NCBI RefSeq assembly: GCF_033153115.1
Contig: NW_026889783.1
Coordinates: 1,550,001-1,614,000 of the forward strand
Source of the DNA: Saccostrea echinata
Lineage: Eukaryota
Direction of reading: 5' to 3'
DNA: 64,000 nucleotides
Shown here: one piece after another, positions 13,201-16,200 of the stretch
Position numbering within the stretch: position 1 is the first letter of the stretch
Layout: every line of letters starts with the position of its first letter
Program-made: the position numbers and the translations under genes
The notes under the pieces: model-generated
Database searches by the model: none
What the model was told of the DNA's origin: nothing
The model's input: the letters and a program-made list of their open reading frames with translations, nothing else

Positions 13201-16200
13201 GAGTCTCTGGTGTCTGTCCATCTGTCATCCATAAAAATTAAACCCTGAAATAGGGGTATCAAAGTTTGACATGGGAATAGATAGGAAAAAATCATCCTTT
13301 AATGAACAACAAGGTAATGATTTACTCATAATGTATGCAAGCATCCTCAAGTAGTGAAGATTCAAGTTGGTCAAAATCATTTGCCAGACTTATTATTATA
13401 ATAATATTAAAATATTCCCTATTTGTATTTTTTTCATTTTTTTTTCTTCAAATAAATCTGAGATCAGATTTTATATATAAATTGGTAAATGCATGTATAC
13501 ATGTGAAAAAAAAAAATTTAGGAAACATATAAGCCATGTTAGCCATATTGATAATGAAATATTCTCATGTTGTGGAATCAGTTTTGGATTAGACATGGCC
13601 TTATGACCCAAGGTGTGGCCACAATATTGGCTCAAATTTGTTTTTATGAGAATTAAGGGGGATAAGAATGTCTTAGAAATCTGAAGAACACCAAGGTAAC
13701 TCAAGTGAATGTTGTGGGCCAGGCCTCTTATTTAAATTGCCCACTTTCATTATCCCTGCAGATTTTTAACATCTTATTTGGCATATTTTTTAAGGAGAAA
13801 ATTATTTTTCTAACATTAATTTCACTGTTTTTTTTTACACACCATAGAGTAATATTTTAGATACATCCGGGCTTTCATATACAGTGCTATTTTTAGATCA
13901 ACAGTGAGTCTCTTTAATTCTATTTTTAACACATTGCCATGTGGTTGGGACTACTTTCATGGCTAACATTTTCTTGTTTAACAAACAAGTATGCATTTAA
14001 AGAAATGTACCTATTGTAGTGAGTTTACATTTAAATCAAAGGTTCTTCACAAATAGTTGTAGCCACTTAATTGGTTTAACTATTTCATATTTTTTTGGAT
14101 TTTTTGGTGCACTACTAAAACCTGTGGCTGCGCAGTCCTGCAGGTGTATTGTGCACTTCATAGCTGCAAACTGCTGCAAGTGTTAATTAAGCTGCATATA
14201 CCTAGAGATTGTTTTCATTATGAAGATGACATGGACCAGTTTTCAAGTGTTAACAAGGCTTAATTTTTGAGATATTAACGTTTTTATTTTTAGTGAGTCT
14301 CACTTGGCTGCACACAAAACCAAACCCTTAAAATACCTCAGTATTATAAGTGTAAGCCCTTGTTGATCTACATACATTGTATATAAAATAAATGTGATAT
14401 ACATGTCTCTACCTTCATATTCCTCTTCATCCTCTAGTTCTTCGGGGACAATCATGTTCATCAGACACAGAACTTCTGTGGGAGGACCTGCTCCCTGGTT
14501 CAGGTTCAAGCCTGGAATCTGGAGCTGAACCGGCTAGAATACAAGATATCCTCATTTACAAACAAACCAGGAACAGAATACACTAAACATGAAAACAGAA
14601 GAACATCCAAATTTTCTTCAATTCTTAAGTCAGGTCCTCTGAAGAATCCTCTATTTTGTTTATGTACTCTAAATTATTTAATATATTATGTATGACAAGA
14701 TTTTCATGAGGGAGTAGTAAATATCGTAACTTCTGTTACAACACTGAGTAATGTAATAAAGGTTCCCCAAAACAAAATTACTGTAAATTTACAGAAATTT
14801 ATGCTATTACAGGCATATTTATTATATAAAATTTACCACTTGAGAGTTCTTTGCACCTAAACTGGCTCTTTGTACAATTAATTTTTTGTCTCCTAACTGC
14901 ATACCATTCAGTCCTGCACAGCCCTGTTAAAATAAAATATTTATATATCATCGATAATAAAAATACACTGTATTATACATCAAAATAAATACATTAAAAA
15001 TATTTATACATCATCAAATCATGCACTTGATGCACGCTTCCTTAATTAAATTAATGTAGATTAAGATACACCAGCATTCTTTTCTGTACATCCACAGAAG
15101 AAAAGTATACAAGCTCCACAACAAATTAAACTCTGTGTTGATTTGTTTAGCAGAATTTTATTTTCTAGATGTAAACAGGAAGACAAACCTGGTCTGTAAC
15201 ATTGGGGTCTACATATTCACAGAAGGCGTATCCCTTAGACAAGCCTGTGGCACTGTCCTTTACAAGGTTAAAGGCCTTCAATGGTCCAAAAGAGGTCAGT
15301 AACTCCTTCACCTGCAACAAAAACAAGGATTCCTCCTAGTCCAGGAAATCAAAAGGCTATTTCAAATAGTTTTTTTTATAAAGACGGTTTCTTTAATTGG
15401 ACTTATAGTTTTTGTTTAAAAATTCATTCAATAAAATTACAATCTTACCTGCTACAAATTGCACATCTGAAGGTCCTATACTAAACTAGTAATTTCCCCC
15501 AGAAAATGCAATGTCTTATTTGCCAGTTTTCAACCAATTTAACCTACCCATCCCAACAAAGCTCCCTGTCCCAATTTTTCTGTTTGTAAACCTTTCAAAA
15601 CAGACTACACCTCTCTCAAAACTGATGTGTATTTCTGAGGACATTGACTCACTTTTGCCAAGTCGACAGAACCAAACATCTCTCTTTTGCCAGAATCAAT
15701 TTATGATTGCCTTGTTCTACACCTATCAGTAACTCCACTTTTTACCTTAATACAGGGTTTTGTAGGGGATCTACCTTTTTTCAAAATAATACCCCACGGA
15801 TCACATACAAACCGAGCAGTCTCTCCCACAATAATGAAGACTTGCCTTTTGTTGCTGATGTGCTTAATTAACCATGGGAGGAGCAACCTCTTCCCCTAGG
15901 CTAGGGAACAAAGAGGGGAAGAAAAATAAAACTCTTATCAGTCACGTGATACATGTACATGTTAACAACTGTCAGAAATTTCTATCTTATTATTTGTTTA
16001 AAAATTCGACTAAATTTAACAAATTTAGAATACATTAACATATAACCTTTACAGAAAAATCTGCCAAAATAAATAAATTTTTATACCAAAGCTGAAAAAG
16101 AATTCCTGTAAGAAATTGCTGAAAAGAAAGTTTTGACTGCTTCTAAGGACTGAAAAAGAAAACCCTTCTCTTCTCCCACCCACAATGCTTTACCCAAGGG

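What the first reader, a model, noticed from the sequence alone, without database searches (positions are those of the whole stretch)
15449..15945. Candidate autoregulatory poison/decoy exon in U2AF2 intron 7: strong Py tract, premature stop and ~16 decoy 5' splice sites
Seen (minus strand): CTGAT branch-like motif, then TTTTATTTTTCTTCCCCTCTTTGTTCCCTAG, among the strongest pyrimidine tracts in the gene, in mid-intron. Splicing exon 7 (phase 0) to it reads [10 protein letters not shown] (TAA 15870-15868), truncating the protein inside RRM2. The next 450 nt are crowded with donor-like motifs: GAG|GTTGC, AAG|GCAAGT, TCG|GTTTGT, AAG|GTAGAT, AAG|GTAAAA, TAG|GTGTAG, AAG|GCAATC, CTG|GCAAAA, TTG|GTTCTG, TTG|GCAAAA, AAA|GTGAGT, GAG|GTGTAG, AAG|GTTTAC, TGG|GTAGGT, CTG|GCAAAT and finally a strong CAG|GTAAGA. 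I see no transposon in this intron, unlike several others. Established: U2AF65 binds Py tracts; splicing factors often autoregulate through poison exons; decoy exons with clustered 5'ss motifs promote intron retention (e.g. OGT, SF3B1); C. elegans uaf-1 has a stop-containing alternative exon. Inference: this is a U2AF65-sensing negative-feedback switch in a mollusc, acting through NMD or intron detention.
Basis: partly seen in the sequence, partly recalled or inferred. Interest (0 to 1): 0.85.

Follow-up and report, generated by a model that had tools for sequence, protein, structure and literature searches.

The report
Ancient poison exon in bivalve U2AF2
Inside one intron of a bivalve's gene for the splicing factor U2AF65 lies a short stop-carrying "poison" exon, conserved in distant invertebrates, next to a cluster of fake splice acceptor sites, and this intron alone stays unspliced in RNA, which fits a self-limiting switch of a kind already known for human U2AF2.

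Summary

- **Conservation.** A ~45-nt element (window 15884-15931, minus strand) recurs inside the same U2AF2 intron in six other eukaryote contigs. Insect-like versions also exist.
- **Inclusion.** One mRNA-like contig has the homologous 68-nt exon spliced exactly between exon 7 and exon 8. Truncated arthropod proteins end in the same xRxRG-stop tail.
- **Exon size.** The exon is about 55 nt (15846-15900). It ends at a conserved GC donor, AAG|GCAAGT, not at 15449.
- **5' splice-site crowd.** It is not enriched: 7 sites against 7.7 in dinucleotide shuffles. That stretch is also the least conserved part of the intron.
- **Acceptor cluster (new).** A cluster of TTTTCAG acceptor-like motifs at 16092-16257 is the densest in the 64 kb. 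It recurs upstream of the exon in other species.
- **Retention.** RNA contigs of three runs and of a related species retain all of intron 7, while the other introns are spliced out.

Best reading: an ancient unproductive-splicing and intron-retention module that limits U2AF65. Autoregulation by U2AF is inferred. Inclusion in this species was not seen among the listed joints. A human U2AF2 poison exon is already published. The scan's earlier notes held nothing on this.

The parts
16413..16491 (-). U2AF2 exon 7 (start of RRM2, ends ...NYLNEDQ, phase 0)
   Evidence: Six-frame reading; RNA joints 16491>16871 and 15309>16411.
15312..16412 (-). Intron 7 (1101 nt), selectively retained in RNA. It opens GTA TAA, so the retained form stops after one extra codon. 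Its donor CAG|GTATAA is the weakest of the gene's verified donors.
   Evidence: Contigs cross both borders: 15285-16440 in X1 and X5, 15188-16491 in X4, and a 1104-nt contig of the related species in X9. Other introns have no or about 20-fold lower contig depth. Donor scores. Single copy.
16092..16257 (-). Cluster of acceptor-like motifs. Four exact TTTTCAG at 16251-16257, 16150-16156, 16119-16125 and 16092-16098, plus TCTTACAG. Seven YYYYNYAG lie in 16040-16412.
   Evidence: Unique maximum of the 64 kb on both strands. Dinucleotide shuffles give P <= 0.0005. Equivalent clusters lie upstream of the poison exon in L002, L006, L019, L020, L045, L012, L026 and L036. It lies in the intron part that differs at only 30 of 690 aligned positions in the related species.
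15937..15941 (-). Branch-point-like CTGAT about 37-41 nt upstream of the poison-exon acceptor
   Evidence: CTGAT, CTCAT or CTAAA-type motifs sit at the same place in L002, L003, L006 and L036. Inference only.
15901..15930 (-). Pyrimidine tract and acceptor AG of the poison exon, the strongest tract in the gene
   Evidence: 19 of 20 pyrimidines against 10-15 of 20. Conserved in L019 (95% over 40 nt), L002, L003, L006, L036 and L045. Unique in the genome.
15846..15900 (-). Poison cassette exon, 55 nt as inferred. It starts CCTAGGGGAAGAGG, carries an in-frame TAA at 15868-15870, and also shifts the frame.
   Evidence: Homologous exons of 42-76 nt have a stop at codon 6-13 in L002, L003, L006, L019 and L036 and in insect-like L027 and L012. 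A 68-nt homologue is spliced between exon 7 and exon 8 in L022. Protein tails LRYRG, RRVRG and LRERG follow NEDQ. Inclusion in this species was not among the 15 joints listed.
15840..15845 (-). GC-type donor GCAAGT of the poison exon (AAG|GCAAGT)
   Evidence: The same AAG or CAG|GCAAGT donor lies 42-76 nt after the acceptor in L002, L006 and L019.
15888..15923 (-). Possible hairpin. The tract UUCUUCCCC (15915-15923) pairs with GGGGAAGAG (15888-15896), leaving the acceptor AG in the loop.
   Evidence: RNAalifold on 6 sequences gives 9 pairs. 92.6% of cells pair against 61-80% when slid, but this is no better than shuffles. The purine arm is not kept in the insect-like versions. Speculative.
15449..15845 (-). 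This is ordinary intron downstream of the poison exon. Donor-like motifs are not enriched.
   Evidence: shuffles. In the related species 15409-15605 has 23 mismatches and 5 gaps in 197 nt, and 15606-15734 does not align.
15189..15311 (-). U2AF2 exon 8 ([19 protein letters not shown]..., RRM2)

Best explanation
Intron 7 of this bivalve's U2AF2 gene is an ancient regulatory intron with three parts.

1. A short poison cassette exon (15846-15900). It has the gene's strongest pyrimidine tract, a conserved start CYTAGGGGAAGAGG, an early in-frame stop and a GC donor.
2. A cluster of consensus acceptor heptamers (TTTTCAG), 190-360 nt upstream of that exon.
3. A weak exon-7 donor followed at once by a stop (GTA TAA).

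Proposed working: when the acceptor-recognising machinery (the U2AF65/U2AF35 dimer) is abundant, it occupies the decoy acceptors and the poison-exon acceptor. Two outcomes follow. Either the poison exon is included, giving a truncated reading frame that NMD would be expected to remove. Or the partial, unproductive exon definition blocks removal of the whole intron, giving the retained-intron RNA that is seen. Both outcomes lower the output of productive U2AF65 mRNA.

Shown: the exon's conservation, its inclusion in a related mRNA-like contig, the motif cluster and its recurrence in other species, and selective retention of the intron.

Inferred: that U2AF itself is the sensor, that NMD or nuclear detention removes the products, and the exact 3' end of the exon in this species.
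For: Selective retention:
- Contigs of X1 and X5 cross both intron borders (15285-16440).
- The X4 contig runs 15188-16491 unbroken and is spliced at all other junctions.
- Introns 6, 8 and 9 have no coverage. Intron 5 is seen only at contig depth about 3.5, against 79-168 for intron 7.
- A related species (exons 92-94% identical) also has a retained-intron contig in a run recorded as RNA. Its part 15735-16424 differs at only 30 of 690 aligned positions.

Conservation of the acceptor element:
- blastn finds 95% over 40 nt in L019, whose exons are 79-81% identical.
- An nhmmer profile gives E 1e-10 to 1e-12 in L002, L003, L006, L019 and L036, and 1e-4 in L045.
- All of these lie inside the same intron.
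- Early stops and GC donors are conserved. Insect-like versions are in L027 and L012.

Inclusion:
- L022 has a 68-nt insert between ...NEDQ and VKELL..., and the insert is not bounded by GT..AG.
- Truncated proteins end in PE-type tails in a termite, a crayfish and a psyllid.

Acceptor-motif cluster. The element is unique in the genome.

Literature:
- Decoy exons bound by U2AF promote retention of introns over 1 kb (PMC6097662).
Against: - No joint 16413>15900 or 15846>15311 is among the 15 joints listed for this species. 77 more were not shown, and contigs drop rare variants.
- Contigs cannot prove that one molecule is spliced elsewhere and unspliced here, and contig depth is a poor measure of level.
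- X1, X4 and X5 are only guessed to be RNA, although they carry eight spliced joints.
- Nothing here shows U2AF binding, NMD sensitivity or nuclear retention.
- A very strong tract is not what a simple 'used only at high U2AF' sensor predicts. The hairpin that could mask it has no covariation support and is not kept in the insect-like versions.
- The acceptor cluster is absent from L027 and L074. In the window it is partly a 13-nt tandem duplication.
- The taxa of the metagenome contigs are unknown.
Confidence: 0.6

Rival explanations
1. The same conserved poison exon and retained intron are controlled by other factors rather than by U2AF65 itself. Candidates are SR or Tra2-type proteins on the purine-rich GGGGAAGAGG, and PTB or hnRNP-type repressors on the UCUUCCCCUCUU tract. 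This would be cross-regulation within the splicing-factor network, not autoregulation.
For: The most conserved letters are a purine-rich enhancer-like run and a UCUU/CUCU-rich tract. Both are classic motifs for SR proteins and PTB, which is my own general knowledge. The tract is stronger than any real acceptor of the gene, so it may need a repressor to be skipped. No binding data exist here.
Against: The nearby cluster of full acceptor heptamers, recurring across species, points to the U2AF dimer rather than to SR proteins or PTB. The human gene is described as limiting itself (PMC8091538), although Pervouchine 2019 rated that as low confidence.
Confidence: 0.25
2. One reading: a roughly 450-nt poison or decoy exon from 15900 to 15449, whose many internal 5' splice-site-like motifs hold U1 and cause retention.
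For: The strong donor CAG|GTAAGA at 15449 exists (score 11.3). Donor-like sites are somewhat more frequent than in most windows of the 64 kb (top 2-6%).
Against: The sites are not enriched over dinucleotide shuffles (7 against 7.7, P = 0.68). The stretch 15409-15734 is the least conserved part of the intron in the related species. Homologous exons elsewhere are 42-76 nt and end at a conserved GC donor.
Confidence: 0.04
3. There is no regulation. Intron 7 is simply the slowest intron of the gene, being long with a weak donor, so pre-mRNA with it accumulates. The acceptor-motif cluster would be a neutral tandem duplication.
For: The weakest donor of the gene. A 13-nt tandem repeat within the cluster. 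Read-through of neighbouring introns is also common among assembled U2AF2 fragments.
Against: Deep conservation of the acceptor element, stop and GC donor. Recurrence of motif clusters in independent species. The 5' two-thirds of the intron are as conserved as the exons in the related species. In many species this intron is by far the longest of the gene.
Confidence: 0.05

Closest known systems
Human/vertebrate U2AF2 poison cassette exon (Kovalak et al. 2021, PMC8091538; Pervouchine et al. 2019, PMC6547761)
   Same: Same gene. A highly conserved cassette exon with a premature stop, described as the gene's own negative feedback. It is barely visible in ordinary RNA-seq because the product decays.
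   Different: Whether it lies in the same intron and is homologous in sequence was not tested. No vertebrate genomic DNA was at hand, and human sequence was not used. One catfish protein with an insert after ...NDDQ (P0291) hints at the same intron. Features here that I did not find described in the searched papers: invertebrate conservation, the GC donor, the upstream acceptor-motif cluster and strong intron retention.
C. elegans uaf-1 alternative exon 3 with about ten UUUUCAG/R repeats (Zorio et al. 1997; MacMorris et al. 1999). This is from my own knowledge; the papers could not be fetched.
   Same: A tandem array of the acceptor consensus inside an alternative, stop-containing region of the U2AF large-subunit gene itself. 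The RNA accumulates rather than being productive.
   Different: In the worm the repeats are inside the included exon, and that exon lies before the RRMs. Here the repeats are intronic, upstream of a separate short exon, within RRM2. Nuclear retention was not tested here.
Decoy exons that promote intron retention (SF3B1 intron 4, OGT, ARGLU1; Parra et al. 2018, PMC6097662)
   Same: A retained intron over 1 kb in a splicing-factor gene, holding a highly conserved, stop-carrying, poorly included cassette exon with a good acceptor.
   Different: Function and U2AF binding are not shown here. The extra array of bare acceptor motifs is not part of the published decoy-exon picture.
RBM39 (a U2AF65 relative) autoregulatory poison exon (Campagne et al. 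2023, PMC10477243)
   Same: A U2AF-homology-family protein limiting itself through a poison exon.
   Different: A different gene with different cis elements. No evidence of relatedness of the exons.
Poison exons controlled by conserved intronic RNA structures (Sf3b3; PMC11162794)
   Same: A possible conserved stem that hides a splice signal of a poison exon in a U2-associated factor gene.
   Different: There the branch site is hidden and the structure is supported experimentally. Here the stem would hide the pyrimidine tract and has no covariation support.

Membership tests
Poison cassette exon (unproductive splicing coupled to NMD) of a splicing-factor gene | Cassette exon with usable 3' and 5' splice sites inside an intron of the coding region | tested here: met
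   Acceptor with 19 of 20 pyrimidines. Conserved GC donor AAG|GCAAGT.
Poison cassette exon (unproductive splicing coupled to NMD) of a splicing-factor gene | Inclusion in mature RNA is observed | tested here: inconclusive
   Observed for the homologue in L022 and implied by arthropod protein tails. Not among the 15 joints listed for this species, with 77 more not shown.
Poison cassette exon (unproductive splicing coupled to NMD) of a splicing-factor gene | Inclusion brings a premature stop upstream of further exon junctions | tested here: met
   TAA at 15868-15870 in frame. 55 nt also shifts the frame. Stops at codon 6-13 in all homologues.
Poison cassette exon (unproductive splicing coupled to NMD) of a splicing-factor gene | Conservation above that of surrounding intron | tested here: met
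   Only this element aligns between the introns of distant species.
Poison cassette exon (unproductive splicing coupled to NMD) of a splicing-factor gene | Included isoform is degraded by NMD, and inclusion responds to the level of the encoded protein | not testable with these tools
   Needs an NMD block and U2AF2 dosage experiments.
Decoy-exon-mediated intron retention (Parra et al. 2018) | Intron over 1 kb retained in otherwise spliced transcripts | tested here: met
   1101-nt intron. Contigs cross both borders in four runs of at least two species, while the other introns are absent. Caveat: these are contigs, not single molecules.
Decoy-exon-mediated intron retention (Parra et al. 2018) | Conserved non-coding cassette exon within the retained intron | tested here: met
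Decoy-exon-mediated intron retention (Parra et al. 2018) | U2AF bound at the decoy acceptor, and decoy splice sites required for retention | not testable with these tools
   Needs CLIP and minigene mutants.
uaf-1 exon-3-type acceptor-repeat element (C. elegans) | Tandem matches to the acceptor consensus in an alternative region of the U2AF large-subunit gene | tested here: met
   Four TTTTCAG in 166 nt, the unique maximum of the 64 kb, with P <= 0.0005 against shuffles. It recurs in 7-9 of 11 loci.
uaf-1 exon-3-type acceptor-repeat element (C. elegans) | Repeats lie inside the included alternative exon | tested here: not met
   They lie 190-360 nt upstream of the poison exon, in the intron. 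They are part of the RNA only in the retained-intron form.
uaf-1 exon-3-type acceptor-repeat element (C. elegans) | Repeat-containing RNA is held in the nucleus | not testable with these tools
   Needs cell fractionation or in situ hybridisation.
Detained intron (post-transcriptionally spliced, nuclear, NMD-insensitive) | Nuclear, polyadenylated, stable to NMD inhibition, later spliced | not testable with these tools
   Only the presence of the unspliced intron in RNA contigs is shown.

The most novel reading that the evidence does not exclude
An ancient U2AF-sensing module, at least protostome-wide and possibly bilaterian, sits in the RRM2 intron of U2AF2. An array of bare consensus acceptor sites acts as a concentration sensor or sponge for the U2AF dimer. 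It works together with a short poison exon that has an exceptionally strong, possibly stem-masked pyrimidine tract and a GC donor. The module would be homologous to the vertebrate U2AF2 poison exon and would work like the acceptor-repeat exon of C. elegans uaf-1. The output would be a mix of NMD and nuclear intron detention.
Probability: 0.35. Interest if true: 0.75.

Novelty: new member of a known kind. Interest (0 to 1): 0.6.

Why it matters
U2AF65 is the factor that picks nearly every 3' splice site, so its level has to be held steady. How this is done is barely worked out: one sentence and one low-confidence prediction for the human gene, and an old worm study.

The comparison here gives a compact element with testable parts: an acceptor array, a 55-nt exon, a GC donor and a weak upstream donor. 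Its core has outlasted the synonymous sites of the coding exons across distant invertebrates. That gives clear mutations to make in a minigene. It also offers a way to ask whether the vertebrate exon, the worm exon and this one share one ancestry.

It is also a worked example that a poison exon can be read from raw sequence.

Tried and rejected
- **5' splice-site crowding:** tested and rejected.
- **Known RNA family in 14300-18800:** none at E <= 1, so no snoRNA-type explanation for the conservation.
- **Stable fold of the intron's 5' part:** z = -1.18, not notable.
- **Repeat or transposon origin of intron 7:** single copy. Only short chance repeats and one 13-nt tandem array.
- **Hairpin between the tract and the exon start:** predicted, but covariation is no better than shuffles, and the purine arm is not kept in the insect-like versions. 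Kept only as speculation.
- **Weak exon-7 donor as a conserved feature:** rejected. Other species have GTAAGT, GTAAAG or GTATGT.
- **Counting which intron is read through in assembled protein fragments:** read-through after exon 6 (about 35 clusters) is more frequent than after exon 7 (13). The query biases this count, so it says little.
- **The two C. elegans uaf-1 papers:** not held.
- **First related-loci query:** too short.
- Single exons by reference and tool-returned proteins were used instead.
- **N run at 26929-27067:** left alone.
- **Earlier notes of the scan:** nothing on this.
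Full report
**1. The observation**

The window carries a U2AF2 (U2AF65) gene on the minus strand, from about 18777 down to 7263 (six-frame reading). 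RNA contigs fix eight exon junctions. Intron 7 is 15312-16412 (1101 nt). It separates ...[15 protein letters not shown] from [14 protein letters not shown]..., inside RRM2.

- CTGAT lies at 15937-15941.
- A pyrimidine tract ends ...ttccctag at 15901.
- Reading from 15900 in the phase of exon 7 gives [10 protein letters not shown] and then a stop.

The tract has 19 of 20 pyrimidines at -23..-4 and a 17-nt unbroken run. The eight RNA-verified acceptors of the gene have 10-15 of 20. The intron is single copy in the 923-Mb genome. No Rfam family matches 14300-18800.

The second half of the observation does not hold. I scored donors with an approximate metazoan matrix written from general knowledge.
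- Seven sites in 15449-15900 reach the score of the gene's weakest true donor.
- Same-size windows of the 64 kb give 3.0 +/- 2.5.
- Dinucleotide shuffles of the stretch itself give 7.7 +/- 2.4 (P = 0.68).

The G-rich composition of the stretch explains the motifs.

**2. RNA evidence from public runs**

One run search and one laying of contigs were allowed.

*Same species.* Three runs match with 0-2 mismatches per kb. They are labelled only as guessed RNA, but each carries eight GT..AG joints of this gene.
- X1 and X5 each have a 1156-nt contig from 15285 to 16440. It crosses both borders of intron 7.
- X4 has a 2922-nt contig that runs unbroken from 15188 to 16491 and is spliced at every other junction.
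- The normal exon 7-exon 8 joint is also present in X1 and X5.
- Introns 6, 8 and 9 have no coverage. Intron 5 appears only as low-depth pieces (about 3.5, against 79-168 for intron 7), apart from an interspersed repeat at 17184-17540.

*Related species.* X9 is recorded as RNA and comes from a related species whose exons are 92-94% identical.
- It has a 1104-nt retained-intron contig.
- Its part 15735-16424 differs at 30 of 690 aligned positions, plus 26 gap letters. That is about as conserved as the coding exons.
- 15409-15605 has 23 mismatches in 197 nt, and 15606-15734 does not align.

So the intron is selectively retained in at least two species. Its 5' two-thirds are constrained.

*Caveats.* These are contigs, so linkage along one molecule and levels are only rough. 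No poison-exon joint is among the 15 listed, and 77 more were not shown.

**3. A cluster of acceptor motifs**

Reading the constrained part shows four exact TTTTCAG in 166 nt (16092-16257), together with further YAG sites.
- This is the unique maximum of the whole window on both strands. The background is 0.21 per kb per strand.
- It exceeds dinucleotide shuffles (P <= 0.0005).
- Part of it is a 13-nt tandem array.

**4. Related loci**

I therefore scanned metagenome contigs with the exon-8 reading frame and obtained 80 U2AF2 loci from unknown eukaryotes. None has the vertebrate exon-8 peptide.

tblastn shows that an intron at exactly this position is widespread. It is often by far the longest of the gene: 5.3 kb against 40-84 nt in L027, 2.45 kb against 55-85 nt in L026 and L029, and about 2 kb in L002, L006, L019 and L045.

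blastn of intron 7 against these loci gives one alignable piece, window 15884-15931.
- It is 95% identical over 40 nt in L019, whose exons are only 79-81% identical.
- It is about 80% identical in L002, L003, L006 and L036.
- It always lies inside the same intron.
- A profile of the element finds these at E 1e-10 to 1e-12, and L045 at 1e-4.
- The element occurs once in the bivalve genome.

**5. Anatomy of the exon**

In all homologues the exon starts CYTAGGG(G/A)A(A/G)AG.. and reaches a stop at codon 6-13: LRGRG*, RRGRG*, PRGRGV*, PRERG*.

In L002, L006 and L019 a GC donor, AAG or CAG|GCAAGT, follows after 70, 76 and 42 nt. The window has the same AAG|GCAAGT after 55 nt. The exon here is therefore most likely 15846-15900, not 15449-15900.

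Insect-like loci L027 and L012 have the same tract followed by CTAAGGTATCG(T/C)GGGTA, which reads LRYRG*.

*Direct evidence of use.* L022 is an mRNA-like contig. It has 68 nt inserted exactly between ...NEDQ and VKELL.... The insert begins CCTAGGGGAAGAGGTTGA and is not bounded by GT..AG.

*Protein collection.* Truncated U2AF2 proteins end with these tails after NEDQ:
- LRYRG in Cryptotermes secundus.
- RRVRG in Cherax quadricarinatus.
- LRERG in an unnamed JGI protein.
- RG in Diaphorina citri.

About 74 others continue with V..., which is read-through into the intron. One catfish model has an insert after ...NDDQ. That hints that vertebrates use the same intron, but I did not test it.

**6. 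The acceptor cluster recurs**

Upstream of the exon, TTTCAG or TTNCAG clusters beat dinucleotide shuffles in most loci. The figures below are the maximum count in any 150-nt window, with shuffle P values:

| Locus | Max per 150 nt | P against shuffles |
|---|---|---|
| L002 | 6 | < 0.001 |
| L006 | 5 | < 0.001 |
| L020 | 5 | < 0.001 |
| L019 | 3-4 | 0.007 |
| L045 | 3 | 0.005 |
| L012 | 3 | 0.012 |
| L026, L036 (TTNCAG) | 4-5 | <= 0.007 |
| L027, L074 | 1-2 | not significant |

Elsewhere in these loci the maximum is 0-2 per 150 nt. The sequences of the clusters do not align with each other. Only the architecture is kept.

**7. A possible stem**

RNAalifold pairs UUCUUCCCC of the tract with GGGGAAGAG of the exon start, leaving the acceptor AG in the loop.
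- 92.6% of cells pair, against 61-80% when the partners are slid.
- Shuffles do as well.
- The purine arm is not kept in the insect-like versions.

I keep it as speculation.

**8. Mechanism**

Shown:
- A conserved stop-carrying cassette exon.
- Its inclusion in another species.
- A conserved array of acceptor motifs.
- Selective retention of the intron.
- An immediate stop in the retained form (GTA TAA).

Inferred: the U2AF dimer binds the array and the exon's acceptor. At high U2AF this gives either inclusion, with NMD expected, or stalled exon definition and retention, as in the decoy-exon model (PMC6097662). Either outcome lowers productive mRNA.

The main rival is control by other proteins, such as SR proteins on the purine run or PTB-type proteins on the UCUU-rich tract.

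**9. What is known**

- Kovalak et al. [quoted passage not shown] Its inclusion is 4.7% in RNA-seq but 57.5% in pre-translational mRNPs.
- Pervouchine et al. 2019 list the exon as a low-confidence candidate.
- The acceptor-repeat exon of C. elegans uaf-1 is the nearest precedent for the array. This is from my own knowledge, since the papers could not be fetched.
- I found no paper in the searched library on the invertebrate exon, its GC donor or the array.

**10. Verdict**

The exon's extent and the 5' splice-site part are wrong.

I file it as a new member of a known kind: a poison exon and retained intron of a splicing-factor gene, already known for human U2AF2. Two features may be new, namely the conserved acceptor array and conservation across protostomes. 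Interest 0.6.

Noticed in passing
window 16327-16372 (minus strand): 41 nt into intron 7, an acceptor-like ctctctttacag is joined directly to a donor, CAG|GTAATG. That donor scores 8.2, stronger than the real exon-7 donor at 3.85. It resembles a recursive or zero-length-exon site, or an alternative donor. Just after it, AGGTCACC (16353-16360) and GGTGACCT (16328-16335) form an 8-bp inverted repeat around a second tag|gtgacc.
   Followed up: partly
window 17184-17540 (intron 5 of U2AF2): Many RNA contigs of all four runs lie here at only 80-90% identity, with joints that go back or skip. This is an expressed interspersed repeat, not part of the finding.
   Followed up: no
L002-L081: In U2AF2 genes of many unrelated eukaryotes, the intron at the NEDQ|VKELL position is far longer than its neighbours. 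An example is 5.3 kb against 40-84 nt in L027. Some loci (L014, L021, L028, L030) lack it altogether.
   Followed up: partly
proteins P0291, P0249, P0250: A catfish U2af2a model has QLGLKKGKFLSTGIN after ...NDDQ, and two beetle proteins have LGLSERSV.. and LGLTSRSL after ...NEDQ. These may be frame-shifted readings of a related exon start (CTAGG...). This is a lead for homology with the vertebrate poison exon.
   Followed up: no
window about 25233-26852 (minus strand): A 40S ribosomal protein SA (RPSA)-like gene lies upstream of U2AF2 on the same strand (peptides). An N run at 26929-27067 lies just beyond it and was left alone.
   Followed up: no
window 252-836; 29839-30842; 43573-44648 and 48738-49668; 46656-47237; 51127-52135: Several long tandem arrays, with periods of 30, 178, 146/292, 29 and 29 nt. 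The 146-nt unit also occurs at 3128-3781.
   Followed up: no
window 15353: All three same-species runs read C where the assembly has A on the + strand. This is a polymorphism or an assembly difference inside intron 7.
   Followed up: no
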